Virus record (IMG/VR): IMGVR_UViG_3300020578_000006
Coordinates: 165,718-229,717 of that record
DNA length: 64,000 nucleotides
Reading direction: 5' to 3' (one strand)
In this document: in pieces, positions 21,837-44,793 of the stretch
Position numbering within the stretch: the first letter of the stretch is position 1
Layout: each line of letters begins with the position of its first letter
Program-made: the position numbers and the translations under genes
Notes under the pieces: model-generated
Database searches by the model: none
What the model saw: the letters and a program-made list of their open reading frames with translations, nothing else
What the model was told of the DNA's origin: nothing

Positions 21837-24278
21837 TTAAATTACTTGAAATTCTATTGTGTAATTTGTATTTGCCCCTAATTGCTGCACTCGCATAGTA
21901 TAAGAGCCTTGATTATAGGGAGCAGAAGCGGTAAGAATTTCTTGATTTATGTTACCGGGTCCAAAGTGTTGTTGTGCTAGCATTTGATCTGGATTATCTC
22001 CTGCTGTCCATTGAGACCCTGATTGAATTCCCAACCATGCTACATTATCTACTGAATTGTAATTCCTAAGTATAATTTTATTTAATATCTTATTATTCCC
22101 TACATTAAAGGTAAAATAATCACTATTTCCAGCTACAGAAGCAACAACTAAGCCATTACCAGTGTTTAAAGTTACAGGTGTAGGAACAAGTGCTATGTTT
22201 GAAAAAGGACCATTAATATTTTCTGCCCATATTGTATAACTAGGAGGCTCGGGGGAAGGTGATGGAGGGCAAGCACTTAAGAATCTTAAGTCTGTTGAGC
22301 TATTTAAATAAAATTGTGTTGAATCTCTATATGGCACCCTACTGAAAAATATATTATTTGTACTTAGTGGTATTGTTGATGTATTTACATAGCAATGTGA
22401 TAGATACTGTGCAAATAATTCAGTTGCTGTTGTTGTTGCTATAGATGTAGCTGGAAATTTGCTAACAGTTAGATTTGTTGTAGGTGGTCGAGAAGGGTTA
22501 TTAATACTAGGGTCTCCAAGACCATAATTGCCTGCTAGACCGGAGCTGGAGAGAGTGTTGACACTAGCACACTGCATTAGAAAATTTTTAGCTTGTTGCG
22601 GTGTAAAATGAGGAAATCTTTCTAATATTGTGCATAAAATACCTGCAATATTGGGTCCTGACATTGAGGTCCCGCTTAGCTTGCTCAAGAAATAACCTGA
22701 ATAACCTGGGTATGTTACACCGCTTATGAAAGCACTTTGAATATATGAGCCTGGAGCATATATACTTACACCACTACCATACTGAGAGTATTCAGCTCTT
22801 GCAGCTACAGCGTCTATTAAAGAAGAAATAGTTCTACCTCCGATAGCCCCTACTGTTATAACTGGATTATCTTCATGTGATGTCCAATTAGAGATAGGAT
22901 AAGCGGGGGAATCTTCTCTACTGTTACACGTACCCGAATTCATTCTATCGTCAATCGGGGTTACAATTAATATGTTTCCATTGCCCGCAGAATGAACAAA
23001 ATGAATGCCATTATCGGTTAATTGTTTTACTTTTTGATCTATAACATCAACAGTACCACATGAATATCCGTAACTATTATTCATTACAGAAGGTCGTGAA
23101 GATAACCCTGGAACAGTCCTTTTATATTTGTGATACCGTTCAATTAAATCAAGCATTAAGTATAAACCTTCAGTAGAATTACCATACCCGTTAGATGTTG
23201 AAAAATTTATTCTCATTGAAAAAATTTGTGCATCTATTGCCCAGCCGCAACTAGAGCCTGCAACGGTTCCTGTGCAGTGTGTCCCGTGGCCGTTGGTATC
23301 TTGATAAAATAAGCTTCTATCTGATTGACAATTATAATCTGTTCTTGCAATTACCCCACCCCCGACCCCGGATCCGGGGAGGCCACCCCAATAATACATA
23401 GTATCTTGCTGTCCAGAAGATGCTAGTGGGTTGTTGTTTGGCCAAACCGTTAATGAAACTGTACCAGTAGAAGCACCATTATTAGAAACATAATCACTAT
23501 TAAAAGGAACATAACTAGTAGATCCTATAAAAAATGGATGCGCGCTAGTTGTATTTACTAAATTAAAATCATAAACACCGGTTCTAAAACTAACAGGAAA
23601 CCCACCGGCTGGGTGTCTAGCTGTAGGAACACCTACTCTATCTTTCACAACATAAACTGTATCTTTTTCAACACCATTAATAAAATATGAATTTTGTCCA
23701 GGATTACCTGGTGAAGCGCTAACAGTCACAGTAATATTTCTATCTGCTGTAACAGGGGCAAATAGTGACCAATTAAGAAACTGTAGTCTTGTTTGACCGT
23801 TTTGATCTAACCATTCAGGATGACCTGGTACTATTCCGGAATCAAGAATTATCGCATCAACACCACTACCTGTATAATGATAGGTAAACTCCATATCAAA
23901 TGGGGGTAGCGCAGATAGAGAATTACACCTTCCAAACCCCCATTGTTCAGGGGTAGTATTACTACTAGAATTAAACGCCTGCCCAACAGTAGTTAATTGT
24001 CTTTTTTTACCAGCTTGACTATTAGGTTCAAATTGAACGTCTAACCTCTCTTCAACAATTACTACCCCAGGGCATTTTTTTAAAGCATTTGCTTCTTCCT
24101 CTGTTAAAAAGGCTTTAATAGTTGTAGATGAAGAAGACATGTAATCACTCACTTCAACACACCGAGAAAGGGAAGGGGTTTCAGTTCCTTCAGGAATAAC
24201 TCCAGGTGTATATAATTGTTCAACAATACTGTCTATTTGGTCTTCTGTTGAAGCGGTTATAAAAAATTCTTTTTTCAT
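21837..24278 (-). CDS. S8 subtilisin-like serine peptidase with inserted domain
   Basis: Triad motifs IILDSG, GHGTHCTG, SGTSMSGP; N-terminal propeptide-like region. Confidence 0.9.
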   Translation of the reverse strand: MKKEFFITASTEDQIDSIVEQLYTPGVIPEGTETPSLSRCVEVSDYMSSSSTTIKAFLTEEEANALKKCPGVVIVEERLDVQFEPNSQAGKKRQLTTVGQAFNSSSNTTPEQWGFGRCNSLSALPPFDMEFTYHYTGSGVDAIILDSGIVPGHPEWLDQNGQTRLQFLNWSLFAPVTADRNITVTVSASPGNPGQNSYFINGVEKDTVYVVKDRVGVPTARHPAGGFPVSFRTGVYDFNLVNTTSAHPFFIGSTSYVPFNSDYVSNNGASTGTVSLTVWPNNNPLASSGQQDTMYYWGGLPGSGVGGGVIARTDYNCQSDRSLFYQDTNGHGTHCTGTVAGSSCGWAIDAQIFSMRINFSTSNGYGNSTEGLYLMLDLIERYHKYKRTVPGLSSRPSVMNNSYGYSCGTVDVIDQKVKQLTDNGIHFVHSAGNGNILIVTPIDDRMNSGTCNSREDSPAYPISNWTSHEDNPVITVGAIGGRTISSLIDAVAARAEYSQYGSGVSIYAPGSYIQSAFISGVTYPGYSGYFLSKLSGTSMSGPNIAGILCTILERFPHFTPQQAKNFLMQCASVNTLSSSGLAGNYGLGDPSINNPSRPPTTNLTVSKFPATSIATTTATELFAQYLSHCYVNTSTIPLSTNNIFFSRVPYRDSTQFYLNSSTDLRFLSACPPSPSPEPPSYTIWAENINGPFSNIALVPTPVTLNTGNGLVVASVAGNSDYFTFNVGNNKILNKIILRNYNSVDNVAWLGIQSGSQWTAGDNPDQMLAQQHFGPGNINQEILTASAPYNQGSYTMRVQQLGANTNYTIEFQVI

Positions 24279-25532: not shown

Positions 25533-28500
25533 TTATTCTACTCTTATAAACCCACCGCTTAATGCGATGTAAGACAGTAGAACCTCCGTGCTTAATGCAT
25601 CTAATCCGATTCTTAAATGAATTGGATTTGCGGGATTATAATCCATAGAAACTAAAGGCAGATTTGAAGTACCGTCGTTTTCCAAAGCATCAGACGCTTG
25701 GAATATAACTTTAGTACTTCCACCAACATCTATTGCTGCCCCGACAAACTGCTTTACCAAAGAGCGAACATTTTTGAGAGTATTTGTTCCGCTCAATTTA
25801 ATAATATCTGTTGAGGTTTCATCAGACCAATTAGGTGGGGTAGTCTGGGTGGCTTGAACTCTGAGATGTTTAGCTACATTACTGTTTGTCATATCAAGAT
25901 ACAGCATACCTCTTAATGATCCGCCTTCTAACAATCTATTTCCTAGATCATTTGCACTTAGTGTAATATAATTACTATATTCCATTTGCACCGCGGGGGT
26001 CATAGAAGCCATGTAAGGTGTGAGTGTATATCTTAAATTACTTAAACTATTAACAGTTGTGTGAGTGCTGTCCCAATCAGCTGAAGTCTCATTTACAGAA
26101 GTATAAGTACTATCCCAATCAGCTGAAGTCTCATTTACAGAAGTATAAGTACTATCCCAGTCGGCTGAAGTCTCTGAAACCGATGTATAAGTTGAATTCC
26201 AGTCGGCTGAAGTCTCTGAAACCGATGTATAAGTTGAATTCCAGTCGGCTGAAGTCTCATTTACAGAAGTATAAGTACTATCCCAGTCGGCTGAAGTCTC
26301 ATTTACAGAAGTATAGGTACTATCCCAATCAGCTGAAGTCTCATTTACAGAAGTATAAGTACTATCCCAATCAGCTGACGTCTCTGAAACCGATGTATAA
26401 GTACTAACCCAATCAGCTGAAGTCTCACTTACAGATGTGTATGTAGCATCCCAATTAGCTGATGTTTCACTAACGGAAGTGTATGTGGCATCCCAGTTAG
26501 CAGAGGTTTCACTGACGTCTGTATATGTAGCATCCCAATTAGCTGATGTATTGCTAACGTCTGTATAGACATTGTTCCAATCAGCTGATGTTTCACTAAC
26601 GTCGGTGTATGTGGCATCCCAGTTAGCAGATACCGTGGCTATATCATTGGTTACAGAACTATATGCTTGATCCCAATCAGCTGATGTTTCACTAACGTCG
26701 GTGTATGTGGCGTCCCAGGTAGCAGAAGTGTTACTAACGTCGGTATAGACGTTGTTCCAATCTCCGCTTAACACATTTACCGTATCTCTAGAAGATTGAA
26801 GAGGTATTAATATTTCATCCACATCAGTTTTTGTGTAATATAATGAAGATACAAAATTACCGCTAACGGAGGCAAACTCTAAAACCAGTGAATCGACATA
26901 TCGTTTAGATACAAACTCATCTGCATTTGTAAAATTAGTAGACAAGGTTTGAGAAGTTGTTAACTTCCCGATCATATTGTCACCTATATCTCTTATGTAG
27001 CTATTGCTAAGCGTGTTGTAGGTTGTATAGGTACCGTTCCATTTTAAGGAGTTGTTATTAACATAATCATATGTGGCATCCCAGTTAGCAGTTACCGGGG
27101 CTATATCATTGGTTACAGAACTATAAGCTTGATCCCAGTTAGCAGTTACCGGGGCTATATCATTGGTTACAGAGCTATAAGCTTGATCCCAGTTAGCAGT
27201 TACCGGGGCTATATCATTGGTTACAGAGCTATAAGCTTGATCCCAGTTAGCACTGGTTTCGCTTACCGAGGTGTAAGTGCTGTCCCAGTCAGCCGAAGTT
27301 TCGCTTACCGATGTATAAGCTTGATCCCAGTTAGCACTGGTTTCGCTTACCGAGGTGTAAGTGCTGTCCCAGTCAGCCGAAGTTTCGCTTACCGATGTAT
27401 AAGTTGAATCCCAATTGGCGCTAGCTTCACTTACAGAAGTATAAGTACTATCCCAGTCGGCTGAAGTCTCTGAAACCGATGTATAAGTTGAATTCCAGTC
27501 GGCTGAAGTCTCACTTACAGAAGTATAAGTACTATCCCAATCAGCTGACGTCTCTGAAACCGATGTATAAGTACTATCCCAATCAGCTGAAGTCTCATTT
27601 ACAGAAGTATAAGTACTATCCCAATCAGCTGACGTCTCTGAAACCGATGTATAAGTTGAATTCCAGTCGGCTGAAGTCTCATTTACAGAAGTATAAGTAC
27701 TATCCCAATCAGCTGACGTCTCACTTACAGAAGTATAGGTACTATCCCAATCAGCTGACGTCTCACTTACAGAAGTATAGGTACTATCCCAATCAGCTGA
27801 CGTCTCACTTACAGCTGTATATGTAGCATCCCAATTAGCTGACGTCTCACTTACAGCTGTATATGTAGCATCCCAATTAGCTGACGTCTCACTTACAGCT
27901 GTATATGTAGCATCCCAATTAGCTGACGTCTCACTGACGTCTGTATATGTAGCATCCCAATTAGCTGAAGTCTCACTGACGTCTGTATATGTAGCATCCC
28001 AATTAGCTGAAGTCTCACTTACAGAAGTATAAGTACTATCCCAATCAGCTGACGTCTCACTTACAGAAGTATAGGTACTATCCCAATCAGCTGATGTTTC
28101 ACTTACCGAGGTGTAAGTACTATCCCAATTGGCGCTAGCTTCACTTACTGATGTGTAAGTGCTATCCCAACTAGCAGACGCAGTTTGTAACGGTGTTATA
28201 AAAGCTGATTCTTCCCAACTATCCGACAATGATCTTACTAGAGTTTCGACACTCCCCCAACCAGCTGAATTAGTTCTGGTTGTACTGTAAACCGAATCCC
28301 AACTAGCAGACGCGGTTTGTAACGGTGTTATAAAAGCTGATTCTTCCCAACTATCCGACAATGATCTTACTAGAGTTTCAACACTCTCCCAACCAGCTGA
28401 ATTAGTTCTGGTTGTACTGTAAACCGAATTCCAATCATTACTATTTCCGTTAAAAGCATAAACTATATTCCTGGCGCTTAAATTAGAACTAACATTTACG

Positions 28501-31500
28501 CCATTTAAAAATGATATATGTAAAGTGTTTGCCCCGGTACCAGGTGTATCGTCACTATCAGAAATTACAGCTGAATTCCCTGCAGTAGCACTATAAAGAT
28601 CTGTTACTGATAAACTTGCTAGATGGGTAAGGGCTCCTATGGTAACTTCATTGCTAGAGAGGTATTGCAAAACGGTACTTAATGCAAAATCTGGTTGCCA
28701 GTATCCGGAATTGGTTGTTGTTGTATTATAATTACTTACCCAGTTATTACTGTTTCTGCCATTTCCTGTTCCTGCTAAATCTATGCTGTTAGAAATATTT
28801 AAACCTGCACTAATAGTTACCGTTGTCGAATTAATCTCAAATAAATTTCTTCTAACTGTATCCGAAGTGCCGTTACCAACAATAAAGAGACTTGATGACG
28901 GTTGATTGTATAAACCTATAACAACCTGATTAGATCCGTTGCTAATTAATGATTCACCACCTACGGTGACAGAATTATTACCATAAACATAATTGTTTCT
29001 TCCTGCAAAATTACCAGAAAAATTACCTACTACTACACCTTGATATCCTAAGCCGTAAGAAAAATTACCGTAAGACTCTGATACACTACCTAGTACACTG
29101 TTTTTAATTGTACCTCCGCTAAGATAAGAAAAATTATCTGCACTGGTAAACCTATAGTTCTCTCTCTCAAAATAAAACCCTGCTGTACCGAATGTTGGTC
29201 TATGTACTGTGTCTTGTGAACCACCGTACAATACCCAGCCAGCATTTCCAGCTGCAGAACAAGATATTGTTATGTTTTCAAATGCATATGAATCCATTAA
29301 ATTACCTATAGTAATTTCTAGATCGTTTCCATTTTTTGCTCTTACATAAGCATCAAAATAGCCGTATCTGTAAGTATTACTGTTGGTTAAGGTGTTGTTG
29401 GGTCTATCTGGTAAAATAAATCCTGTTCCCGCAGGGGATGTGGAGGGCATTTCCCTTGGTACCCATAATGTAAGAGGGGAGCCACTCTTAAGTCCAGTTA
29501 AAACACTAGAATTAGTAAATCTAACTAAAACATGTTTAGGAATATTTTTATAATTACCTGTAAGACCTACGTAATCAGTACCTGGTGTTCCAATTTGACT
29601 TGTAATAATAGAGACACCAGGGTTCCCTCCATTTGCTCTAGACTGTAAATTGACATTTTGTCTTGTTTTTTGTGCTGGTACCCAGTTGGATTGATTACCT
29701 ATAAATAAATCAAATCTAAACGTGGAGAGCGTTGGGTTAGCAGAAACCTGAGTACACTGTGCATTATATGATGCTGCTACTATACCGGCGACCCCTGGGT
29801 TAACAGCCAGAGTGACAACCTCACCAACATTGATTAGAGAATAGTTTGTATTGGTGGTTGAGTTAACTCCAATTAATACCCCTGTCAATCTATCAGTATT
29901 TGTTAAAAGTAAAGCGTTGTTAGTGTCAACAAATCCACCCTGATTGGCAGTAATAGTTGTAGAAATTTGAAATTGAGGTAGGGTGTGTACAAAAAATCTA
30001 TTTGTATACCCGCTAGGTAGGTTATAACCATAAACATCGCTAACATTACCACCCATGGTCATTTGCCATTCTCGGGTAGCGTTAAATGGCGCGCCTACCC
30101 ACATTACGTGGGTGTGATCTGAACCCCCGGTAAAGTTATTAATACCTGCTCTAAAAGTCATTCCGTGTGTAATGGCGGCTCTTCCATCACTTACAAATGT
30201 TGTGCCTGGGTCCATGTTATCTACGTTTTGAATATGAAGTCCGTAGACACCTAGGTTAGGTAAATTCCTTACGGAAGTATCGTAAGTAGGTGATTGGCCT
30301 TTAAGTATCAAGCCGCCAGGTAATGCAAAAGTTGATTCGGAATTAAAGAAATCGTAATTTTGCCGAAGCGTTGCACTTAAGGCAGGGTAATCTGAGTTTT
30401 TAACTAGCGTTCCAATCTTAGGTGAAATTACTATTCCACCGGCGCTAATTCTATCTGTTACAGTATTGCTTAGTGTTCTTACGTCGTTTGTAGAAAGATA
30501 GTTTGTTACTGTAGGTAGTATTTCAGCACTTTCTTCCCAAGTCGTGGATAGTGCTTGTACAGTGTTCTTAACACTATCCCAACCAGCTGATATTTCTGAA
30601 ACCGATGTATATGTCGAATTCCAGTTAGCAGTTACCGGGGCTATATCATTGGTTACAGAGCTATAAGCTTGATCCCAGTTAGCAGTTACCGGGGCTATAT
30701 CATTGGTTACAGAGCTATAAGCTTGATCCCAATTAGCAGATGTATCCCTTACAGATGTGTAATTATTATCCCACTTAGCACTATTCTGACTTACTGAGGT
30801 GTATGTTCCTCCACCATCGTTCCAGCTTGCACTAACAGCAGCTACACTACCATAAACACTATCCCAGTTAGCAGAGTTGTTTCTACTAGATGTATAATTG
30901 CTGTTCCAATTAGCTGATACAGCAGCAACATCTGATATAAAACTAGATTCTTCCCAAGCATCTGAGAGTGACCTTACTGTTGTTTCGACTGATTCCCAGC
31001 CAGCTGAATTACCTTGGGTAGTACTATAAACTGAATTCCAGTTAGCAGAAGTATCTCTTACAGATGTTTCAACTGATTCCCAACCCCCACTATTACTTTG
31101 TGTGGTGCTATATACACTATTCCAGTTAGCAGATGTATCCCTTACAGATGTGTAATTATTATCCCACTTAGCACTATTCTGACTTACTGAGGTGTATGTT
31201 CCTCCACCATCGTTCCAGCTTGCACTAACAGCAGCTACACTACCATAAACACTATCCCAGTTAGCAGAGTTGTTTCTACTAGATGTATAAACTGAATCCC
31301 AATTAGCAGAATTATTTCTACTAGATGTATAATTGCTGTTCCAATTAGCTGATACAGCAGCAACATCTGATATAAAACTAGATTCTTCCCAAGCATCTGA
31401 GAGTGACCTTACTGTTGTTTCGACTGATTCCCACCCTCCACTATTATTTTGGGTAGTACTATATACACTATTCCAGTTAGCGGATGTATCCCTTACAGAT

Positions 31501-32072
31501 GTTTCTACACTCTCCCACCCTGCAGAATTACTTTGTGTAGTACTGTAGGCGGAATTCCAATTAGCAGAATTATTTCTACTAGATGTATAGGTACTATCCC
31601 AGTTAGCAGAAGTGGTTCTTGAAGATGTATAATTGCTATTCCAATTAGCTGATGCATCTCTTACAGATGTTTCAACTGATTCCCAGCCCCCACTATTGCT
31701 TTGTGTAGTGCTATATACACTATCCCATTCAGCTGAATTTGCTGAAGTTGCTGTATATGCCTGATCCCATTTTCCACTATTTTGTAAGACACTTGTATGT
31801 ACTGATTCACCTAACGTTTTTAAGAAAAATATTTCTGCTAAATCTCTGTTACCTGATAATATTTTATATAAGCTAGTAAAGGTGTCGACCGCACTTAAAC
31901 TACCAGAGACTATTAAGTCACCAGGCAAAACTATTTCAGAATTTACCGGGTAAGCTGAAGCAGGTAAAAAATAGTTGTAGCTAGAATCAATTAGATTCTT
32001 AAAATCTGCTTCTGACGGAAATTTGCCAGTCTTAAATGCAGTGTATAATTCAGCTATATTGACAATTGCCAC
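25533..32072 (-). CDS. Giant 2179-aa fibre/adhesin with Trp-containing 14-aa repeats and a YadA-head-like segment
   Basis: N-terminal FKTGKFPSEADFKNLIDS; A(N/D)WDSTYTSVSETS repeats; GN.S..G repeats ending LFIVGNGTS; AATAAATA-4-GTG. Confidence 0.8.
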   Translation of the reverse strand: MAIVNIAELYTAFKTGKFPSEADFKNLIDSSYNYFLPASAYPVNSEIVLPGDLIVSGSLSAVDTFTSLYKILSGNRDLAEIFFLKTLGESVHTSVLQNSGKWDQAYTATSANSAEWDSVYSTTQSNSGGWESVETSVRDASANWNSNYTSSRTTSANWDSTYTSSRNNSANWNSAYSTTQSNSAGWESVETSVRDTSANWNSVYSTTQNNSGGWESVETTVRSLSDAWEESSFISDVAAVSANWNSNYTSSRNNSANWDSVYTSSRNNSANWDSVYGSVAAVSASWNDGGGTYTSVSQNSAKWDNNYTSVRDTSANWNSVYSTTQSNSGGWESVETSVRDTSANWNSVYSTTQGNSAGWESVETTVRSLSDAWEESSFISDVAAVSANWNSNYTSSRNNSANWDSVYGSVAAVSASWNDGGGTYTSVSQNSAKWDNNYTSVRDTSANWDQAYSSVTNDIAPVTANWDQAYSSVTNDIAPVTANWNSTYTSVSEISAGWDSVKNTVQALSTTWEESAEILPTVTNYLSTNDVRTLSNTVTDRISAGGIVISPKIGTLVKNSDYPALSATLRQNYDFFNSESTFALPGGLILKGQSPTYDTSVRNLPNLGVYGLHIQNVDNMDPGTTFVSDGRAAITHGMTFRAGINNFTGGSDHTHVMWVGAPFNATREWQMTMGGNVSDVYGYNLPSGYTNRFFVHTLPQFQISTTITANQGGFVDTNNALLLTNTDRLTGVLIGVNSTTNTNYSLINVGEVVTLAVNPGVAGIVAASYNAQCTQVSANPTLSTFRFDLFIGNQSNWVPAQKTRQNVNLQSRANGGNPGVSIITSQIGTPGTDYVGLTGNYKNIPKHVLVRFTNSSVLTGLKSGSPLTLWVPREMPSTSPAGTGFILPDRPNNTLTNSNTYRYGYFDAYVRAKNGNDLEITIGNLMDSYAFENITISCSAAGNAGWVLYGGSQDTVHRPTFGTAGFYFERENYRFTSADNFSYLSGGTIKNSVLGSVSESYGNFSYGLGYQGVVVGNFSGNFAGRNNYVYGNNSVTVGGESLISNGSNQVVIGLYNQPSSSLFIVGNGTSDTVRRNLFEINSTTVTISAGLNISNSIDLAGTGNGRNSNNWVSNYNTTTTNSGYWQPDFALSTVLQYLSSNEVTIGALTHLASLSVTDLYSATAGNSAVISDSDDTPGTGANTLHISFLNGVNVSSNLSARNIVYAFNGNSNDWNSVYSTTRTNSAGWESVETLVRSLSDSWEESAFITPLQTASASWDSVYSTTRTNSAGWGSVETLVRSLSDSWEESAFITPLQTASASWDSTYTSVSEASANWDSTYTSVSETSADWDSTYTSVSETSADWDSTYTSVSETSANWDATYTDVSETSANWDATYTDVSETSANWDATYTAVSETSANWDATYTAVSETSANWDATYTAVSETSADWDSTYTSVSETSADWDSTYTSVSETSADWDSTYTSVNETSADWNSTYTSVSETSADWDSTYTSVNETSADWDSTYTSVSETSADWDSTYTSVSETSADWNSTYTSVSETSADWDSTYTSVSEASANWDSTYTSVSETSADWDSTYTSVSETSANWDQAYTSVSETSADWDSTYTSVSETSANWDQAYSSVTNDIAPVTANWDQAYSSVTNDIAPVTANWDQAYSSVTNDIAPVTANWDATYDYVNNNSLKWNGTYTTYNTLSNSYIRDIGDNMIGKLTTSQTLSTNFTNADEFVSKRYVDSLVLEFASVSGNFVSSLYYTKTDVDEILIPLQSSRDTVNVLSGDWNNVYTDVSNTSATWDATYTDVSETSADWDQAYSSVTNDIATVSANWDATYTDVSETSADWNNVYTDVSNTSANWDATYTDVSETSANWDATYTSVSETSANWDATYTSVSETSADWVSTYTSVSETSADWDSTYTSVNETSADWDSTYTSVNETSADWDSTYTSVNETSADWNSTYTSVSETSADWNSTYTSVSETSADWDSTYTSVNETSADWDSTYTSVNETSADWDSTHTTVNSLSNLRYTLTPYMASMTPAVQMEYSNYITLSANDLGNRLLEGGSLRGMLYLDMTNSNVAKHLRVQATQTTPPNWSDETSTDIIKLSGTNTLKNVRSLVKQFVGAAIDVGGSTKVIFQASDALENDGTSNLPLVSMDYNPANPIHLRIGLDALSTEVLLSYIALSGGFIRVE
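26060..26760 (-). repeat. 42-bp coding tandem repeats, distal block of the fibre gene
   Basis: Repeated TCCCA(A/G)TC(A/G)GCTGAAGTCTC units. Confidence 0.85.
27075..28170 (-). repeat. About 22 x 42-bp plus 3 x 54-bp coding tandem repeats
   Basis: Counted from the translation (14-mers, then ANWDQAYSSVTNDIAPVT x3). Confidence 0.9.
30600..31760 (-). repeat. Proximal repeat block of the fibre gene (14/18-aa units, nested duplications)
   Basis: SANWNSVYSTTQ and DAWEESSFISDVAAVS units repeated. Confidence 0.85.
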
Positions 32073-37960: not shown

Positions 37961-38222
37961 TATCTTCTCCTGCTGCTGTCTGTATATCTAATTTGTTACT
38001 GTAAACCTTTTCTAAGACGGCTATAGACATAATACCTATAATTATAAACGCTGCAATAATTGAAACAGCTTTGCAAATTGTTCTTCTGACATTTTGCCTC
38101 TTATGGTATGCTTTATAAGAAGAAAGAAAATTATTAAAATAGTCAGAGGAAGGCGAATTAAGATCAGAAGCCCTCTTAATAAGTCTCGAAAGCTCATTCA
38201 TTGGGGCCCTCTTGTTGCACAA
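37947..38222 (-). CDS. Single-TM membrane protein
   Basis: Hydrophobic AVSIIAAFIIIGIMSIAVL segment. Confidence 0.5.
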   Translation of the reverse strand: MCNKRAPMNELSRLIKRASDLNSPSSDYFNNFLSSYKAYHKRQNVRRTICKAVSIIAAFIIIGIMSIAVLEKVYSNKLDIQTAAGEDSESK

Positions 38223-41200
38223 CTAAAATTAATAGTCGCAGTATTTTTAACTGCTGCAGCGTTTAATGAGGCTACATCTGACTCCATAGAATCTTCTACC
38301 ATAATTATTTTTATTGCAGCAGTTCCAAATGCTGGTATGTTCTTATACATAAATCTCCATTCTTTTTCATATCTAGAATTTACATCTACTTTAGGAACTT
38401 GTGCCCATGCTAAATTACCTTTAGACCCATCAGGGTTAACAAGAACACCATTTCCATTGTCCTCTCCGGTTGCCGCATCATCGTTAAGAGCGTTAGCATC
38501 TCTTATATTATAGAATACTTCCTTTACAGTGCTATCTGTTTTTATAACAAATTCGTAGTTTTGACTAGTTAATGTTTCTCCCGGTCTAGGATAAAGAATT
38601 TGACCTGAAGGGGGTTTAGAATCATAATAAAAAACTTGAGTAAAAGTATTATAGTAAGGTGTAAAGCCTGGCGCCTTAAGGAATGCTCGAGCTCTTAATA
38701 CATGATAGCCTTCTTCCAAGCCCACTCTTTTACTTGCAAAATCATTATGTACATAGTTTTCAACTGTTGTTGCATTAAAATTAGTTACAGAAAATTGTGA
38801 TGCCATTTTGCTTTTTATACTGACCATATTACCGTTAGAAGGAAAAACACTTAATGTATCTAAATAAGTGCCGCCAATTTTATAACGCAATTGACCCGTT
38901 GGCCAAGGTATTTGTACAGACCACCAATACGTAGGTCTTCCATTACCATCATTCGGACCAGTTCCGTCTCTTATAGCTTCTAGTACTCTTGTTGAAGCTA
39001 TTGCAGCTACGCCTCCATAGCCCTCAGGAAAAGAAATACCATCAGTTGTGTAATATACAAAAAGTTTAGCATTATTATAATACTCACCAGTTTTGATTCT
39101 AATAGTGGCACTTGAAGCATTAGCTACAAACTGACGTCTACCATCTGCAATTACGTTTGGATCATGATAGATGTAATCGGAAGGTGTAAAGAATGCGTTA
39201 GGACCATTTCCTAAATTAAAATTAACTCTTCTAAGCCCCTTTATAGCTATATAGGTTTCAGCTCCTTGCGAACCTACTATATTACGATTAACGTTAGCTG
39301 CAGCAAACTTATCTCTTACTCGGTAATCAAATTTCATTTGTTCATAACCTAAAAACATATCATCAGTGCCTGGGGGATAGTCCCTCTTGATGTCCGTCAT
39401 CGAACCCAGGCCCATTTGAGAGTTAACGTCAACCCCTCCATCTAGTTTTAATAATACATTTTCCGCTGAGCCATCGAGTTGTACAATAAAGCTTAAATTT
39501 TGACCAGATCTTACAATAGGAATAAATGTTTCATATGTATAATCAGAAGTGTTTGTATCATATAAGCCATAAGGGTTAAACGCTGCATCTCCATTCGTTC
39601 CATCTTTTCTTTTAACTTTTATGTAAGGAACATTAGTACCGTTTTCTCTTATGTTTATAGCATTTAAACCTGTGTTTAAAGTAGGTCTTTCAGGAGTACG
39701 ATAAGAGAACATATAATAACTACTAGGCGGGACTATGACATTTCTTAATTCGTTTGCATACTTATAAAACCCTACTTGACCAGATCCGTTGGGCCCGGTA
39801 GCATATTGAAACAGATAAGCATCAGAAGGAAATGAAGAAGTAATAGGTGCAGACTTTCCATTCCATCTATTTCCGTTTATCATTGCGATCATAGTAACTC
39901 CGGTTGCATCAGAAGATGCACCATATCTTCTATCTATTCTTTCATAAGCAACATAATCGTTATTGGACCATATTCCCTTTTGACTGCCTCTTGCAAAATT
40001 ATTATGTATTTTAACTAAATTAGGAATCCTAGGGTCACTCCATTGTCCAAGAAAAGCTGAATTTGCTATACGGGGAAATTCACCTCCTGAATTTGTTAGT
40101 ACCCCTGCATGGTAATTGCCATCTGTATATATAAGAGGAAGGCCTGCTCTAGTAAAATAGAATGCGTGTTGAATATGGCGGTCGGTAGACCAACCATTAT
40201 CGTGAGATTGTGAATGCATAACAGCTACATCTGAACCAAAGCCTCCTGAGCCTTGACCATCAAAGCCAGATAAATTATTCCCTATTCTGTTATCTAGATT
40301 ACTTTTAAGAATATTATCTACTAGTCTCATTCCTGCATTAATATAATCACCATAAGGAGGTGGTTCACCGAGGTGCTCACCAAACATCATAGCATCATCT
40401 CTACCTAGATCAGTATTAAAAACACTATCTCGGTGATTGATATCTGCAAAGCCTCTAGATATATTAAACTGTCTTTGTGCTTGACCTACATAACCATAAT
40501 CAGAAAAATCTTTATCAGTTCCATAAGAAGCACCAAAGAAATCATATGGCACGTGCTTTACAGCGTCTAATCTTAATCCATCACATTTAGTTCTATCCAT
40601 AAACCAACGTACCGCTCTATTAAGATATTCTTCTACGTACTCTGAATAATATGCTTCATTAGCAGCAAGATACTCAACTGTTAATCCATTCTCATAACCA
40701 AACCCTACATAATTACCGTTTGCGTCATAACAATAAAATTCTGGGTTATTAGGATGTCTTAAGAACTTTACCTTTTGTGTCCACCATCCCTCGTTTGGTC
40801 CATGATTCTTATTCCAGATACCCGTCTCTGTAGCAATATCTATTAAATCAGATAATCCTCTGTTTTGTACTTCCCATACATTACCCCAATCACTTGTGTT
40901 ATACCATTTGCGGTAAGTACCATCAGGCATTAACTTAAGATGAAAGTCTTCAGGTCTCATTCCTGGATACAAATCAAGAGGTGTATCAGCTGTATACCCA
41001 GGTGTATCAAACCCGCGGTGATTCATTATATTATCAAAATAAACTCTGATACCAAAACGGTGTGCGGTTTCAATTAACATCATGAGTTCAGCTTCAGTAC
41101 CATACCTTGTATAAGTAGAACCTCTTTGGTCTTTAGAACCTAAATCAAATGGATCAAATAAATCATATCCTACTGAAAATGAACTACCAGCTTTTGCAGG

Positions 41201-41356
41201 GGGAGGAAGCCATAGAGAATCATAACCTACTTCTGCAAGTTCAGGAAGCTTGGCAGTAATTTCTGCCCAACTAGTATTAAAATACTGAAGCATAGCCTCA
41301 GCTTGAACGTTAACTGAAATGAAAAGAGAAGCGAAAAATGCAATTGCCCTTTTCAT
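38198..41356 (-). CDS. Secreted multidomain GH13 alpha-amylase-family enzyme
   Basis: Signal peptide; LWLPP, GYDLFD, DNIMNH, GLRLDAVKH (nucleophile), FGEH (acid/base), SHDN. Confidence 0.9.
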   Translation of the reverse strand: MKRAIAFFASLFISVNVQAEAMLQYFNTSWAEITAKLPELAEVGYDSLWLPPPAKAGSSFSVGYDLFDPFDLGSKDQRGSTYTRYGTEAELMMLIETAHRFGIRVYFDNIMNHRGFDTPGYTADTPLDLYPGMRPEDFHLKLMPDGTYRKWYNTSDWGNVWEVQNRGLSDLIDIATETGIWNKNHGPNEGWWTQKVKFLRHPNNPEFYCYDANGNYVGFGYENGLTVEYLAANEAYYSEYVEEYLNRAVRWFMDRTKCDGLRLDAVKHVPYDFFGASYGTDKDFSDYGYVGQAQRQFNISRGFADINHRDSVFNTDLGRDDAMMFGEHLGEPPPYGDYINAGMRLVDNILKSNLDNRIGNNLSGFDGQGSGGFGSDVAVMHSQSHDNGWSTDRHIQHAFYFTRAGLPLIYTDGNYHAGVLTNSGGEFPRIANSAFLGQWSDPRIPNLVKIHNNFARGSQKGIWSNNDYVAYERIDRRYGASSDATGVTMIAMINGNRWNGKSAPITSSFPSDAYLFQYATGPNGSGQVGFYKYANELRNVIVPPSSYYMFSYRTPERPTLNTGLNAINIRENGTNVPYIKVKRKDGTNGDAAFNPYGLYDTNTSDYTYETFIPIVRSGQNLSFIVQLDGSAENVLLKLDGGVDVNSQMGLGSMTDIKRDYPPGTDDMFLGYEQMKFDYRVRDKFAAANVNRNIVGSQGAETYIAIKGLRRVNFNLGNGPNAFFTPSDYIYHDPNVIADGRRQFVANASSATIRIKTGEYYNNAKLFVYYTTDGISFPEGYGGVAAIASTRVLEAIRDGTGPNDGNGRPTYWWSVQIPWPTGQLRYKIGGTYLDTLSVFPSNGNMVSIKSKMASQFSVTNFNATTVENYVHNDFASKRVGLEEGYHVLRARAFLKAPGFTPYYNTFTQVFYYDSKPPSGQILYPRPGETLTSQNYEFVIKTDSTVKEVFYNIRDANALNDDAATGEDNGNGVLVNPDGSKGNLAWAQVPKVDVNSRYEKEWRFMYKNIPAFGTAAIKIIMVEDSMESDVASLNAAAVKNTATINFSCATRGPQ

Positions 41357-41364
41357 ATTAATAT

Positions 41365-41925
41365 TTATTTGGCAAACAATTTCTTATCTTTATATGGACA
41401 AAAACTATATACATCATCAAAAGGTGTCTTGTTAGGATCGTCCTGCTTTTGATTTTTACCTAAGCTTACTACTATGAAATCTTTAGGTACATTTTCTTGA
41501 AAGTTTTTACCATAATATTCTACTTTACCAGAACCGTCTATATCCCATTTTAATGCATATTGATTCTTCCACGGGTCAAGTAAGGTACCATCTTCTTTTA
41601 TACCTTCACCATAATAAGGTCTTAAGATTTTACATACATCTTTACTATCATCTATTCTAGTAGGAGGACCATACCATGCGTAATATTCATGGTCAAAAGG
41701 ATACCCCTTTCTAGGCGCAGGCCATGCAATCAAGCCATTTTCAGATTTATAAAGCTGTACAGCATGATACAACCCTCTCATTTCTACATTCTGTACTTTA
41801 GATATTTTTGTTTTTTCTTGTATATGCTGGTAAGCAGGAAATGACAAGCTAACTAGTAAAAGAATGATGCTGACGGCTACAAGCATCTCTATAATAGTAA
41901 ATGCTGTAGCCGTCAGCTTCTTCAT
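41365..41925 (-). CDS. Type IV pilin/pseudopilin-like protein
   Basis: AFTIIEMLVAVSIILLLVSLSFPAY N-methylation segment; LDPWKNQY and S.GKN. Confidence 0.85.
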   Translation of the reverse strand: MKKLTATAFTIIEMLVAVSIILLLVSLSFPAYQHIQEKTKISKVQNVEMRGLYHAVQLYKSENGLIAWPAPRKGYPFDHEYYAWYGPPTRIDDSKDVCKILRPYYGEGIKEDGTLLDPWKNQYALKWDIDGSGKVEYYGKNFQENVPKDFIVVSLGKNQKQDDPNKTPFDDVYSFCPYKDKKLFAK

Positions 41926-41927
41926 TC

Positions 41928-42581
41928 TTACTTTCTCTTTTTAAGAAGTAGTAGTGCGCTAACACCTAACAATGATAGGATTGAAGGTTCGGGTACAGCA
42001 GTAAATTGTGTTAAGTAATTTACTCCCCCGTTGCTTGCATAGTTTTCAAAACTACCACTGCTTCCACCGTTAGACCATGTAAAGTCAGCCTTTGCATACA
42101 TTTCTATTGTGTATGTTTTAGGTGCTTGAATGGTACCAGCGGTTACGTTCTGTAATAAGTTAACAGAAGAATTGGCTGCCCAATATTTGTTAACGTTACC
42201 ATCAGTCCATGAGTTACTAAACGGAACGTTATATGAACTGAATGCACCTTTATCAGCTGCACCAGTTTCATACACCCTCCAGTATAAAGTAACTGCATTA
42301 GCAGAATCTGTAGAACTTTGCCAGGTTTTAGCAGTTGCACTAGCTAATTGTAGTAACCCACCTTGATTCATGTTAATAGTACCAAGGCTAGCAGGTAAAG
42401 AATTAGCAGGGTTTGGACCATGGGTATCACCAAGCAAATTATAGAACGTAGTTGCTTGATTAATCACATCCAAACTAGAAGCATCTACACTAAACCCAAC
42501 ACCTACTGCATACATAGTATTGGCATAAGATGCTGATGCTAACCCTAAACTTATTACAATAGCTAGAATTAATTTATTCAT
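41928..42581 (-). CDS. PEP-CTERM sorting-domain protein
   Basis: Signal peptide plus VPEPS-ILSLLGVSALLLL-KKRK. Confidence 0.9.
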   Translation of the reverse strand: MNKLILAIVISLGLASASYANTMYAVGVGFSVDASSLDVINQATTFYNLLGDTHGPNPANSLPASLGTINMNQGGLLQLASATAKTWQSSTDSANAVTLYWRVYETGAADKGAFSSYNVPFSNSWTDGNVNKYWAANSSVNLLQNVTAGTIQAPKTYTIEMYAKADFTWSNGGSSGSFENYASNGGVNYLTQFTAVPEPSILSLLGVSALLLLKKRK

Positions 42582-44146
42582 ACATTACCCTCCTTTCTTT
42601 TGAGCGTTCTTATTGCAAGTACCCCTAGTCCTCCAAGCAGCATTAAGCTACCAGCAGAGGGTTCAGGAATACCTGAAACTTCAATGTTATTAACAAACAG
42701 ACCATAGTTTGGTTGATCTGCTGTAGTGGTCTGTATGTCACCTGCATAGAAGTGAATAGTAGTAATATAATCCGGCACATTTACATTAGTCACAAATAAC
42801 ACCTCTGGATTTCCGTATAAATAAGCACTTACTTCAACAAGTGTAGGGGTTAATTGCTCTACCATGTAAGTTAATGCTTGTTGATAGCCATTGGCTAACA
42901 CCTGAGTATTAGTTAATCCAGTACCTGCAAAGGTAATAGGATCTGACCATACATTCTGGAATCTAAACACTGCAGTGTTTCCAGACATGAATTCAACACC
43001 TCGGTTACCTCCATTCCAAAGATAGTTTGCATCTACTGATAGAGTTTGACCTGCTATAAGGCCACCACCATTGAGTACAAACCAACCGTTTGAGTATTGA
43101 TTATAAGCCGTATTACCAGGTACAAAATTAAATGCACTTGCTCCAATACTAGTTCTTCCTCCTTGAGAGGAATTACTAATCTGGGTTATAGCAGATGTGT
43201 CATTTTGGAAGTACCAAGTACCTACACTTGTACCAGCACCTTCTATCCATGTTGCAGTGGTATAGCTGCTGGCATCCTCTATACCTAATACAGCTGCATG
43301 TGTTGTATTTAGACTAAAGATAGCGAGCAATGCAGCAAGCAAGCTAACTTTAGTTTTGTTTTTTGTTCTCATAAAACCTAATAATGTTGCGCCTATTACA
43401 AGCAATAACCAAGTATCTGGTTCAGGAATAATACCTACATCAGAGAGCGAATCACCCACAGATAGATAATCAATATGCACAACAGGTGCTGCAGTTGCAG
43501 AACCTTGTCTTAAGTTAATAGCAGATATAAAAGAAGCTGGCTCTGAACCTGTAGTAGATAGCCAATTAACTGTTCCTAGTTCTGCTACAAGTAATGATCT
43601 GTTTGTATCATTAGGGTTTATGTACAAGCTAAATGTATCATTAAGAGTGCCAGCTACAAAATCCCATGCCATAACTATAGTGTATTCAGTGTTAAAATCT
43701 AATAATGTAGTTCCCCAGGTCATTGCAGATCCTGTGCCTGATGCAGATTGTAATCCCAGTTGAAATCCAGCACCTGAGCTTCTAGCAGCCAATCTTTGAT
43801 AAAAATTGGAAGAAGTACCTGCAGGGTCAGATAGGTTTAAGAAGTAATCACCATTAACAAAGGCAGATGCAATTTTAAGATCTACTCTTGTATATAAAGT
43901 ATTACCAGACGTCTTTACTACTTGTGAAGTTAGTGCTTTCCAAACATCTTGACCTGTTGTATTAATAATTGCTTTACCATCTTGGTACTGAATAGGATTA
44001 TTAGAAGCAGTGGATGTTTGAGTCCATCCATTCTGCCCTACTAGATTTCCATTTACATATCCTGTTGAAAAGTCATCAATTAGATATGTTGCTGCATTGA
44101 GATTTATAGCTACCAATGCAAGTAGTGTTGTTATTAGTTTTTTCAT
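42578..44146 (-). CDS. Tandem double PEP-CTERM protein
   Basis: Signal; internal IPEPDTWLLLVIGATLLGFMRTK; second signal; terminal IPEPSAGSLMLLGGLGVLAIRTLKRK. Confidence 0.85.
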   Translation of the reverse strand: MKKLITTLLALVAINLNAATYLIDDFSTGYVNGNLVGQNGWTQTSTASNNPIQYQDGKAIINTTGQDVWKALTSQVVKTSGNTLYTRVDLKIASAFVNGDYFLNLSDPAGTSSNFYQRLAARSSGAGFQLGLQSASGTGSAMTWGTTLLDFNTEYTIVMAWDFVAGTLNDTFSLYINPNDTNRSLLVAELGTVNWLSTTGSEPASFISAINLRQGSATAAPVVHIDYLSVGDSLSDVGIIPEPDTWLLLVIGATLLGFMRTKNKTKVSLLAALLAIFSLNTTHAAVLGIEDASSYTTATWIEGAGTSVGTWYFQNDTSAITQISNSSQGGRTSIGASAFNFVPGNTAYNQYSNGWFVLNGGGLIAGQTLSVDANYLWNGGNRGVEFMSGNTAVFRFQNVWSDPITFAGTGLTNTQVLANGYQQALTYMVEQLTPTLVEVSAYLYGNPEVLFVTNVNVPDYITTIHFYAGDIQTTTADQPNYGLFVNNIEVSGIPEPSAGSLMLLGGLGVLAIRTLKRKEGNV

Positions 44147-44793
44147 AATCTTTTTCTTAATGCTAGTAATCCTAGTAATGTTAAATGTAAGGTTGAAGGT
44201 TCAGGAACTACTTCAATTATTTCATTACCTCCGTTATAAGAAAATGTACCTACCAATGCTGTAGTATTAGAAGAGAAGACAAACGATTCCATATTAGGTG
44301 TGCTATCAAACAGAGGGGCGCGCCATAAAGTATCAGTTAAAATAGCTTTATCGTAAGAACTGTTATAAGGTGCAGCTGTAAAATTAACTAGGTCTGCATC
44401 ATATATAGCTAATGCAAGTTGTGTATTTACCGCAACATCAGTATTATCTATTTTGCTATAATTGATTTGCATCTCAAGAAAATCTACTCCCGTATCAACA
44501 AAACCTGTACCGTTAGGAAGAGGGGAGAAAATACCATTACTATAAGTACCCCATAACGCTGACATGTAACGGGTATTAACTGTATTATTATCTACAAGAA
44601 CAGAAAATAAATCGTCATACAAAACTATAGAAGAAACAGCTTTGGATTCGGACACCATAAACCAACCAATAAAAAAGCCGCACATTGTGCGGCTTAGCAT
44701 CTTTAAAGCGTTATAAGCGCTCTTGTATCCTAGCATGTGAGGTTCTCCCTCATATAATGTACTTATACCTGCTGTTGTATTGTTTGCAAGCAT
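44143..44793 (-). CDS. PEP-CTERM sorting-domain protein
   Basis: VVPEPSTLHLTLLGLLALRKRL; true start may be a later Met. Confidence 0.85.
   Translation of the reverse strand: MLANNTTAGISTLYEGEPHMLGYKSAYNALKMLSRTMCGFFIGWFMVSESKAVSSIVLYDDLFSVLVDNNTVNTRYMSALWGTYSNGIFSPLPNGTGFVDTGVDFLEMQINYSKIDNTDVAVNTQLALAIYDADLVNFTAAPYNSSYDKAILTDTLWRAPLFDSTPNMESFVFSSNTTALVGTFSYNGGNEIIEVVPEPSTLHLTLLGLLALRKRL

What the first reader, a model, noticed from the sequence alone, without database searches (positions are those of the whole stretch)
42578..44146. Two PEP-CTERM proteins fused, one basic patch serving as both sorting tail and next signal peptide
Seen: ...IPEPDTWLLLVIGATLLGF-MRTKNKTKVSLLAALLAIFSLNTTHA-AVLG... 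The internal Met begins a complete second signal peptide whose n-region is also the positive tail of the first PEP-CTERM. Inference: a polyprotein that exosortase and signal peptidase resolve into two anchored proteins, or a lost stop codon with internal re-initiation. Either is an unusual genome-compaction device.
Basis: partly seen in the sequence, partly recalled or inferred. Interest (0 to 1): 0.6.

Follow-up and report, generated by a model that had tools for sequence, protein, structure and literature searches.

The report
Two phage PEP-CTERM proteins fused
A large freshwater phage carries one conserved gene that joins two secreted, lectin-like surface proteins, so that the membrane-sorting tail of the first runs straight into the export signal of the second; host enzymes probably cut it into two proteins, but this is untested.

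Summary
Window 42578..44146 (-) is one open 522-codon frame. It reads: signal peptide, lectin-like domain, PEP motif, 15-residue hydrophobic segment, MRTKNKTK, a second cleavable-type signal peptide (…NTTHA|AVLG), a second lectin-like domain, and a complete PEP-CTERM tail.

It is not an assembly error. Twenty contigs encode the identical protein. Five relatives at 70-84% identity keep the frame open, and both ectodomains are under strong purifying selection (dN/dS 0.05-0.21, dS up to about 1.9).

The same junction also links other N-terminal and C-terminal domains. Sibling phages have the split form: the upstream PEP-CTERM gene ends in the -1 frame (…YENKKQN*), 14-23 nt past the same ATG. Bacterial homologues, found in exosortase-rich Chthoniobacterales, are stand-alone genes. 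The fusion is therefore derived and confined to a phage clade.

The record is a 229.7-kb phage with a terminase but no exosortase and no signal peptidase. Most likely the precursor inserts as a hairpin with the basic loop in the cytoplasm, host signal peptidase I cuts after A284, and host exosortase processes both PEP signals. Extra initiation at Met259 cannot be excluded, because synonymous change is suppressed there. "Genome compaction" is not supported. Reads could not be checked.

The parts
42578..44146 (-). Fused ORF, 522 codons plus TGA stop (P0001)
   Evidence: identical protein on 20 contigs and full-length homologues at 70-84% identity
44093..44146 (-). First signal peptide, residues 1-18 (MKKLITTLLALVAINLNA); cleavage site inferred
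   Evidence: helix 2-13 in the AF2 model; aligned with the signal peptides of stand-alone N-half homologues
43433..44092 (-). N ectodomain, residues 19-238, concanavalin-A-like lectin/glucanase beta-sandwich
   Evidence: AF2 pLDDT 89; Foldseek hits to calreticulin, legume lectins and polysaccharide lyases; dN/dS 0.05-0.21
43418..43426 (-). First (internal) PEP motif, P241-E242-P243
   Evidence: invariant in all fused homologues; HMM stretch 240-262
43373..43417 (-). Hydrophobic segment of the first PEP-CTERM, residues 244-258 (DTWLLLVIGATLLGF)
   Evidence: always 15 residues between PEP and Met in the fused relatives
43349..43372 (-). Shared basic patch M259-K266 (MRTKNKTK). Met259 is the obligatory start codon of the C-half gene in split relatives. 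The TAA that ends the upstream gene in split relatives lies in the -1 frame inside AAA ACT AAA
   Evidence: M259, K264, T265 and K266 invariant
43295..43348 (-). Second signal peptide h- and c-regions, residues 267-284 (VSLLAALLAIFSLNTTHA); predicted signal peptidase I site after A284
   Evidence: synonymous divergence 5-10 times lower than in the flanks for codons 259-284
42677..43294 (-). C ectodomain, residues 285-490, second concanavalin-A-like beta-sandwich
   Evidence: AF2 pLDDT 81; Foldseek; dN/dS 0.05-0.18
42581..42670 (-). Second, terminal PEP-CTERM, residues 493-522 (IPEPSAGSLMLLGGLGVLAIRTLKRKEGNV). Its last codons contain AAGGAGG (42588-42594), the Shine-Dalgarno sequence of the next gene
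44143..44793 (-). Upstream PEP-CTERM gene (216 codons as listed), joined to the fused ORF by an ATGA overlap
   Evidence: its homologue is the upstream partner in split loci L011, L017 and L022 and the N-domain of fusion P0009
41928..42581 (-). Downstream PEP-CTERM gene (217 aa), ATGA overlap
   Evidence: syntenic in all relatives
41365..41925 (-). Prepilin/pseudopilin-like protein (186 aa) with an N-terminal methylation motif, same operon-like array
   Evidence: syntenic
38198..41356 (-). 1052-aa secreted alpha-amylase-like protein at the end of the array
   Evidence: weak Pfam Alpha-amylase hit on syntenic orthologues

Best explanation
This is a genuine, evolutionarily retained in-frame fusion of two neighbouring phage genes. 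Each gene encodes a Sec-exported, lectin-like PEP-CTERM surface protein. The fusion arose in a phage lineage from a pair of overlapping genes: the upstream tail was read in the -1 frame across the start of the downstream gene, and an indel removed the upstream basic tail and joined the frames.

The steps below are inferred, not shown. The 522-aa product is exported by the host Sec system. The first signal peptide starts translocation of the N domain. The 15-residue hydrophobic segment after PEP241-243 stops transfer. The MRTKNKTK loop (net +4) stays in the cytoplasm. The following 13-residue h-region re-enters the membrane N-in/C-out and starts translocation of the C domain. Host signal peptidase I cuts after THA284. 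This frees a C-half protein identical to the product of the split gene in sibling phages. It leaves the N half anchored by a PEP-TM-loop-h-region hairpin. Host exosortase then processes both PEP signals.

Some initiation at Met259 may persist in parallel, and it would give the same mature C half. The phage supplies neither enzyme.
For: - **The frame is real and retained.** It is open in 20 contigs and in five 520-524-aa relatives at 70-84% identity.
- **Both domains are under selection.** dS is 0.5-1.9 and dN/dS is 0.05-0.21 in both ectodomains.
- **Junction residues are conserved.** PEP241-243, G252, L256, G257, M259 and KTK264-266 are invariant.
- **The (-3,-1) cleavage rule holds in every fused variant:** THA, SNA, INA.
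- **The second hydrophobic segment is only about 13 residues**, which is signal-peptide-like and not a stable anchor.
- **It aligns with signal peptides of stand-alone homologues**, whose mature proteins start at the same residue.
- **Split relatives exist.** In L011, L017, L022, L018, L012 and L028 an in-frame stop lies 1-4 codons upstream of the same ATG. The upstream PEP-CTERM gene ends 14-23 nt downstream in the -1 frame or 3 nt upstream.
- **The homologues examined outside this phage clade are stand-alone.** N-half homologues end in normal basic tails. C-half homologues in 201 Chthoniobacterales-order genomes lie in 237-350-aa open frames.
- **The same hairpin joins other domains:** P0009, P0010 and the 794-aa ORF of L014.
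- **The start region is less open in fused forms.** Around the ATG, fused forms fold at -6.7 to -9.1 kcal/mol and split forms at -1.3 to -4.5.
- **The processing enzymes must be the host's.** The phage has a terminase but no exosortase and no S26 peptidase. The two Chthoniobacter(ales) MAGs that carry stand-alone homologues each have five exosortase genes.
Against: - No processing step has been observed. No signal-peptide predictor, proteome or reads were available.
- It is not known whether exosortase accepts a sorting signal that is not at the C-terminus.
- Synonymous change is strongly suppressed in codons 259-284 (dS 0.06-0.27 against 0.5-1.9 in the flanks). This fits a still-used translation start at Met259, or frequent recombination there, at least as well as it fits pure polyprotein expression.
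- Most genes of this phage lack a Shine-Dalgarno sequence, so its weakness at Met259 says nothing.
- The folding energy at the internal ATG (-6.9 kcal/mol) is typical of real starts in this genome (mean -6.8).
Confidence: 0.5

Rival explanations
1. Gene within a gene. The C half is made mainly by independent initiation at Met259, as in the split relatives. The read-through fusion is a tolerated by-product whose downstream part adds little. The N half is then effectively a PEP-CTERM protein with a long, perhaps degraded, extension.
For: Met259 is invariant and is the only possible start in six split loci. Synonymous divergence is suppressed 5-10-fold in codons 259-284, as expected for a translation-initiation region. 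The downstream A-rich context is unchanged. The local folding energy is like that of real starts. Fused and split states alternate among close relatives, which suggests the C half does not depend on the fusion.
Against: Ribosomes translating the N half still run through the whole frame, so the full-length chain is made in any case and must be handled by the membrane. Termination-reinitiation coupling, which is available in the split forms, is lost in the fusion. The start region is more structured in fused than in split forms. Low dS can also come from recombination at the junction, for which there is direct evidence in the discordant relatedness of the two halves.
Confidence: 0.27
2. An uncleaved two-domain membrane protein. 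The two hydrophobic segments form a permanent hairpin that displays two lectin-like domains on the periplasmic side, and neither signal peptidase nor exosortase cuts at the junction.
For: The four-segment topology is self-consistent. Nothing shows cleavage. It is unknown whether exosortase can process an internal PEP-CTERM.
Against: The second segment has only about 13 hydrophobic residues followed by a canonical small-x-small site, and this site is conserved in all variants. The same sequence is an N-terminal signal peptide in split relatives. The PEP motif is invariant, as expected if it is still recognised.
Confidence: 0.12
3. Programmed -1 ribosomal frameshifting at A_AAA_AAC (codons 262-263) ends a fraction of chains at the conserved -1-frame TAA. 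This would give a normal stand-alone N half ending …GFMRTKNQN.
For: A canonical slippery heptamer lies in the right frame in the window, and the -1-frame TAA inside AAA ACT AAA is present in every variant. That frame is the real reading frame of the upstream gene in split relatives.
Against: The heptamer is absent from fused relatives L003, L005, L009, L010 and L014. No stable downstream RNA structure is present (z = -0.07). The TAA follows from the invariant K-T-K codons.
Confidence: 0.04
4. Artefact or dying gene: an assembly or sequencing error at the A-rich junction, or a recent stop-loss in a pseudogene.
For: The junction is A-rich and the reads could not be examined.
Against: The identical ORF occurs in an independent IMG/VR assembly and on 20 contigs. 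Relatives whose flanks have diverged to dS above 1 keep the frame, and both halves show dN/dS of 0.05-0.21. The junction differs in sequence among relatives yet always stays in frame.
Confidence: 0.02

Closest known systems
PEP-CTERM / exosortase (EpsH, XrtA) protein sorting (Haft et al. 2006, PMC1569441; models TIGR02595, PF07589)
   Same: Both halves have an N-terminal signal peptide, a PEP motif, a short hydrophobic segment and a basic cluster. The terminal copy is a textbook PEP-CTERM. The genes lie in tandem arrays. The likely host lineage is rich in exosortases.
   Different: The first sorting signal is internal, not C-terminal, and its basic cluster is the n-region of the next signal peptide. 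The genes are carried by a phage that has no exosortase of its own. A term search of the 2006 founding paper ('internal', 'fused', 'fusion', 'tandem', 'two copies', 'frameshift') turned up no passage about an internal PEP-CTERM, and neither did the full-text searches.
Bradyrhizobium japonicum FbcH cytochrome b/c1 precursor ('from one gene to two proteins', Thony-Meyer et al. 1991). Cited from my own knowledge; not retrievable in the library
   Same: A bacterial membrane polyprotein in which an internal signal peptide, preceded by a transmembrane segment, is cut by host signal peptidase to give two separate mature proteins.
   Different: The upstream part there is a polytopic cytochrome, not an exported domain with its own sorting signal. 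No exosortase step is involved. Cleavage there is shown experimentally; here it is only inferred.
Envelope polyproteins of Flaviviridae and bunyaviruses (PMC7601889, PMC5402940, PMC5113920)
   Same: A viral gene strings exported proteins together. The C-terminal membrane segment of one protein is followed by the signal peptide of the next, and host signal peptidase resolves them.
   Different: Those are eukaryotic RNA viruses using ER signal peptidase, and their proteins are virion components. Here a DNA phage of bacteria is involved. The products are probably host-surface proteins and carry a second, exosortase-type sorting signal.
Overlapping, translationally coupled phage genes (ATGA and longer out-of-frame overlaps; general knowledge)
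   Same: The neighbours in this array overlap by ATGA. The split relatives overlap by 14-23 nt, with the upstream stop inside the downstream signal-peptide n-region.
   Different: In the window the two frames have been joined, so there is no termination at the junction and therefore no termination-reinitiation.

Membership tests
PEP-CTERM sorting domain (TIGR02595 / PF07589), internal copy at residues 240-266 | PEP motif followed by a hydrophobic membrane segment and a cluster of basic residues | tested here: met
   IPEP, a 15-residue hydrophobic segment, and MRTKNKTK with net charge +4. HMM stretch 240-262. PEP is invariant in relatives.
PEP-CTERM sorting domain (TIGR02595 / PF07589), internal copy at residues 240-266 | Located at the extreme C-terminus of the protein | tested here: not met
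   A further 256 residues follow in frame. The feature is met in stand-alone N-half homologues, for example P0039 and P0040.
PEP-CTERM sorting domain, terminal copy at residues 493-522 | PEP, hydrophobic segment and basic cluster at the C-terminus, on a protein with a signal peptide | tested here: met
   IPEPSAGSLMLLGGLGVLAIRTLKRKEGNV followed by the stop.
PEP-CTERM / exosortase system | An exosortase (EpsH/Xrt) is encoded in the same genome | tested here: not met
   PF09721 finds nothing in the 229.7-kb phage record. Five exosortase genes occur in each of two Chthoniobacter(ales) MAGs that carry stand-alone homologues. The phage host itself is not identified.
PEP-CTERM / exosortase system | Cleavage or attachment by exosortase | not testable with these tools
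   This needs expression in an exosortase-bearing host and protein analysis.
Sec-type cleavable signal peptide (signal peptidase I substrate), internal copy at residues 259-284 | Positive n-region, h-region of 7-15 hydrophobic residues, c-region with small residues at -3 and -1 | tested here: met
   MRTKNKTK, then VSLLAALLAIFSL, then NTTHA|A. The -3/-1 positions are kept as T/A, S/A or I/A in all variants. The segment aligns with the signal peptides of stand-alone homologues. No dedicated predictor was available.
Sec-type cleavable signal peptide, internal copy | Positioned at the N-terminus of the translated chain | tested here: not met
   It is internal in the window ORF. It is N-terminal in split relatives P0016, P0018 and P0024 and in loci L011, L012, L017, L018, L022 and L028.
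Membrane polyprotein resolved at an internal signal peptide (FbcH-like, viral envelope-like) | Two mature proteins demonstrably released from one translation product by signal peptidase | not testable with these tools
   Only the topology and the cleavage-site features are consistent. No protein data are available.
Programmed -1 ribosomal frameshift site | Conserved in-frame slippery heptamer with a downstream stimulatory structure | tested here: not met
   A_AAA_AAC occurs in the window and the P0009-type loci only. It is absent from L003, L005, L009, L010 and L014. The fold z-score is -0.07.

The most novel reading that the evidence does not exclude
The 45-residue 'PEP, hydrophobic segment, KTK loop, signal peptide' hairpin is a selected, portable linker cassette. 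It lets these phages string exosortase-sorted surface lectins into polyproteins. It also lets them shuffle N-terminal and C-terminal ectodomains by recombination at its unusually conserved DNA. This reading implies that exosortase can recognise a sorting signal that is not at a free C-terminus, and that a bacteriophage uses host signal peptidase to resolve a polyprotein in the way enveloped eukaryotic viruses do.
Probability: 0.3. Interest if true: 0.65.

Novelty: new variant of a known kind. Interest (0 to 1): 0.5.

Why it matters
If the precursor is resolved as proposed, it gives a natural substrate for two open questions. The first is whether exosortase needs a free C-terminal tail. The second is whether a bacterial signal peptidase will resolve a natural secreted polyprotein; I know of very few bacterial cases and no phage case. 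The existence of close fused and split relatives with the same mature parts makes this a ready-made comparison for experiment.

The finding also shows that large freshwater phages, probably of Verrucomicrobiota, carry arrays of PEP-CTERM lectin-like proteins that depend on host sorting enzymes. This points to phage remodelling of the host surface or exopolysaccharide layer. If only internal initiation matters, the finding is a modest curiosity of overlapping-gene evolution.

Tried and rejected
- **Reads.** The assembly-error question was answered from independent contigs and homologues instead.
- **Shine-Dalgarno analysis.** It was uninformative: 117 of 185 long ORFs in this genome have no SD-like motif, and such motifs are no more frequent at starts than at internal ATGs.
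- **RNA structure at the junction.** There is none beyond chance (z = -0.07), so it does not explain the low synonymous divergence.
- **-1 frameshifting.** The heptamer is not conserved.
- **Tandem-duplication origin of the two halves.** Profile-profile comparison aligns only the signal peptide and the first ~50 residues after it. The two halves share a fold class but are not demonstrable paralogues.
- **Full-length alignment A3.** It misaligned the single-domain homologues and was dropped. The two halves were modelled separately.
- **Literature.** Searches for phage-encoded or internal/tandem PEP-CTERM signals found nothing relevant. The FbcH precedent could not be retrieved and is cited from memory.
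- **Annotated phages.** The GenBank phage collection has no close homologue.
- **Unpublished genome.** One unpublished genome (G175) appeared among the weak hits.
Full report
**1. The observation**

On the minus strand, window 42578..44146 is a single open frame of 522 codons. Its parts, with coordinates checked by translation, are:
- signal peptide MKKLITTLLALVAINLNA (44093-44146);
- an ectodomain of about 220 residues;
- PEP (43418-43426);
- DTWLLLVIGATLLGF (43373-43417);
- MRTKNKTK (43349-43372);
- VSLLAALLAIFSLNTTHA (43295-43348);
- a second ectodomain of about 206 residues;
- IPEPSAGSLMLLGGLGVLAIRTLKRKEGNV (42581-42670), followed by TGA.

Pfam PF07589 and TIGR02595 both pass their cut-offs and each reports two stretches. 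Hydropathy shows four hydrophobic segments and a +4 loop.

**2. Setting**

The window is the last 64 kb of a 229,717-bp IMG/VR virus record with 35% G+C. The record encodes a large terminase and proteins with PHROG matches. It has no exosortase and no S26 signal peptidase.

The ORF sits in a tight minus-strand array:
- a PEP-CTERM gene at 44143-44793;
- the fused ORF;
- a PEP-CTERM gene at 41928-42581;
- a prepilin-like gene at 41365-41925;
- a 1052-aa amylase-like gene at 38198-41356.

The first three are joined by ATGA overlaps. A fifth PEP-CTERM gene lies elsewhere in the genome. The array is syntenic in related contigs, which also carry ribonucleotide reductase and PhoH genes.

**3. The frame is not an artefact**

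An independent IMG/VR contig differs at 2 of 9566 bases and has the same ORF. The identical protein is recorded on 20 contigs.

Five relatives of 520-524 aa at 70-84% identity keep the frame. In codon alignments of the window gene with L003, L009 and L010:
- synonymous divergence in the ectodomains is 0.5-1.9;
- dN/dS is 0.05-0.21 in the N ectodomain and 0.05-0.18 in the C ectodomain.

The fusion has therefore persisted through long divergence with both halves under purifying selection. Reads could not be consulted.

**4. Where the fusion came from**

Stand-alone homologues of the N half, of 265-280 aa and 55-79% identity, end in ordinary tails such as …IPEPSSPALIAIGIAGLISMRLYKKKK.

Stand-alone homologues of the C half have their own N-terminal signal peptide, and their mature start aligns with A285. 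They occur in Chthoniobacter/Chthoniobacterales MAGs. In 201 genomes of that order, the full-length matches lie in open frames of 237-350 aa and none is fused. Two such MAGs each carry five exosortase genes.

Among phage relatives the C-half gene is often split from its upstream neighbour.
- In L011, L017, L022 and L018 an in-frame stop lies four codons before the same ATG. The upstream PEP-CTERM gene reads the next 20 nt in the -1 frame and ends …LR[NK]KIYEN[KN]KQN* at a TAA inside AAA ACT AAA, a 23-nt overlap.
- In L028, a clade with only 56% identity, the overlap is 14 nt and the tail is …KLKRFYENT*.
- In L012 a stop lies 3 nt upstream of the ATG.

The split, overlapping state is thus widespread and probably ancestral. 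The fused state needs only a small indel that removes the upstream basic tail and joins the frames. The exact event could not be reconstructed.

**5. The junction is a portable module**

The same hairpin has 15 residues between PEP and Met, ending LG[FL]M or LALM, then K/R-T-x-x-KTK and SLLAALLAIFS. It links the C half to other partners:
- the homologue of the upstream 216-aa gene (P0009; L008, L016, L020);
- a 430-residue beta-helix-like domain (P0010; L005-L007);
- in L014/L021, a different N domain joined to a different C domain in a 794-codon ORF.

Nucleotide identity among fused genes jumps from 0.63-0.75 to 0.89 exactly at the internal ATG.

The two halves also have discordant relatedness. 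In the N half, the window, L009 and L010 are close and L003 is distant. In the C half, L003 and L010 are nearly identical and the window is the outlier. Recombination has therefore occurred at or near the junction.

Codons 259-284 show dS of only 0.06-0.27. This is not explained by RNA structure.

**6. What the domains are**

AlphaFold2 models of the two halves reach pLDDT 89 and 81. Both match concanavalin-A-like lectin/glucanase beta-sandwiches, namely calreticulin, legume lectins, PL7-type lyases and a phage Dit carbohydrate-binding module, at TM-scores of about 0.45-0.55. They are probably carbohydrate-binding or carbohydrate-active surface proteins. At the sequence level the two halves align only over the signal peptide and the first ~50 residues after it.

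**7. Mechanism**

*Shown:*
- one open, conserved frame;
- two sorting signals and two signal peptides;
- the internal ATG is a real start codon in sibling phages;
- neither processing enzyme is phage-encoded.

*Inferred:* the chain inserts with the N domain outside and the first PEP-CTERM segment spanning outward-to-inward. The +4 loop stays in the cytoplasm (positive-inside rule). The short h-region spans inward-to-outward and the C domain is outside. Signal peptidase I cuts after A284, and exosortase acts on both PEP motifs.

Features that favour cleavage over a permanent hairpin:
- the h-region is only about 13 residues;
- the small-x-small site is conserved;
- the same sequence is an N-terminal signal peptide in split relatives.

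Known precedents are the FbcH cytochrome b/c1 precursor of Bradyrhizobium (own knowledge) and the envelope polyproteins of flaviviruses, hepaciviruses and bunyaviruses (PMC7601889, PMC5402940, PMC5113920).

**8. What remains open**

Initiation at Met259 may continue.
- For it: synonymous suppression right at the start of the C half, and a local folding energy typical of real starts.
- Against it as the main route: the start region is clearly less open than in split relatives (-6.7 to -9.1 against -1.3 to -4.5 kcal/mol), and termination-reinitiation coupling is lost.

Shine-Dalgarno content is uninformative in this genome. A -1 frameshift at A_AAA_AAC is possible in the window, but the heptamer is not conserved.

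**9. Verdict**

This is a new variant of known kinds, namely PEP-CTERM sorting and internal-signal-peptide polyproteins, found in an unexpected carrier, a large phage. Literature and database searches found no prior description.

One unpublished genome (G175) was among the weak matches. Nothing here rests on it.

Noticed in passing
whole record G000 (window = G000:C1:165718-229717); window 38198-44793; genome 13611-14327: A 229.7-kb phage with a terminase at genome 139482-140075 carries five PEP-CTERM sorting signals, a prepilin-like protein and a 1052-aa secreted amylase-like protein. It has no exosortase and no signal peptidase. I found no description of phage-borne arrays of exosortase substrates in the papers searched.
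   Followed up: partly
L024, L025 (Chthoniobacter / Chthoniobacterales MAGs); G002, G003: Stand-alone homologues of the C half occur in Chthoniobacterales-type Verrucomicrobiota, and these MAGs carry five exosortase genes each. This makes that lineage the best host guess. The prepilin-like neighbour also gives weak hits to 'Verru_Chthon cassette' models. L023, a 1.3-kb contig binned as Methylococcaceae, may be mis-binned.
   Followed up: partly
window 43295-43372 and the same segment in L003, L009, L010, L028: The 78 nt encoding the basic patch and the second signal peptide have 5-10 times lower synonymous divergence than the flanking ectodomains. They remain recognisable in a clade whose mature domain is only 56% identical. 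There is no RNA structure above chance. The cause is unresolved: a translation-start constraint, the legacy of the overlapping frame, or a recombination hotspot.
   Followed up: partly
window 42588-42594 (-): The last codons of the fused ORF (K-R-K-E-G, with R517 K518 E519 invariant) spell AAGGAGG five bases before the ATG of the next gene. Most genes of this phage have no Shine-Dalgarno motif at all. The conserved protein tail may therefore be constrained by the neighbour's ribosome-binding site.
   Followed up: no
L012:243-359: In one relative the ORF upstream of the C-half gene keeps SVIPEP, but the membrane segment is replaced by a hydrophilic 37-residue sequence ending in a stop 3 nt before the ATG. 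This looks like a degraded or recombined sorting signal.
   Followed up: no
L014 (IMGVR_UViG_3300023179_009191) and L018: The same signal-peptide DNA precedes a different mature domain (…NTINA-E[IV]IF…). It is fused in a 794-codon ORF in L014 and split with a 23-nt overlap in L018. Fused and split states therefore both occur for a second cargo.
   Followed up: partly
window 25533-32072 (-), 21837-24278 (-): There is a 2179-codon ORF followed by an 813-aa protein with PHROG protease-type matches. Neither was examined further.
   Followed up: no
G141:C24:29942-30652 and G157:C27:17440-18132: Two bacterial homologues of the C half contain a single in-frame TGA within an otherwise full-length match. 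These could be pseudogenes, sequencing errors or recoding. This was not examined.
   Followed up: no
window 44143-44793 (-): The listed start of the upstream 216-codon ORF is probably too far upstream. A signal-peptide-like segment (MLSRTMCGFFIGWFMVSESKA) begins at an internal Met about 31 codons in.
   Followed up: no
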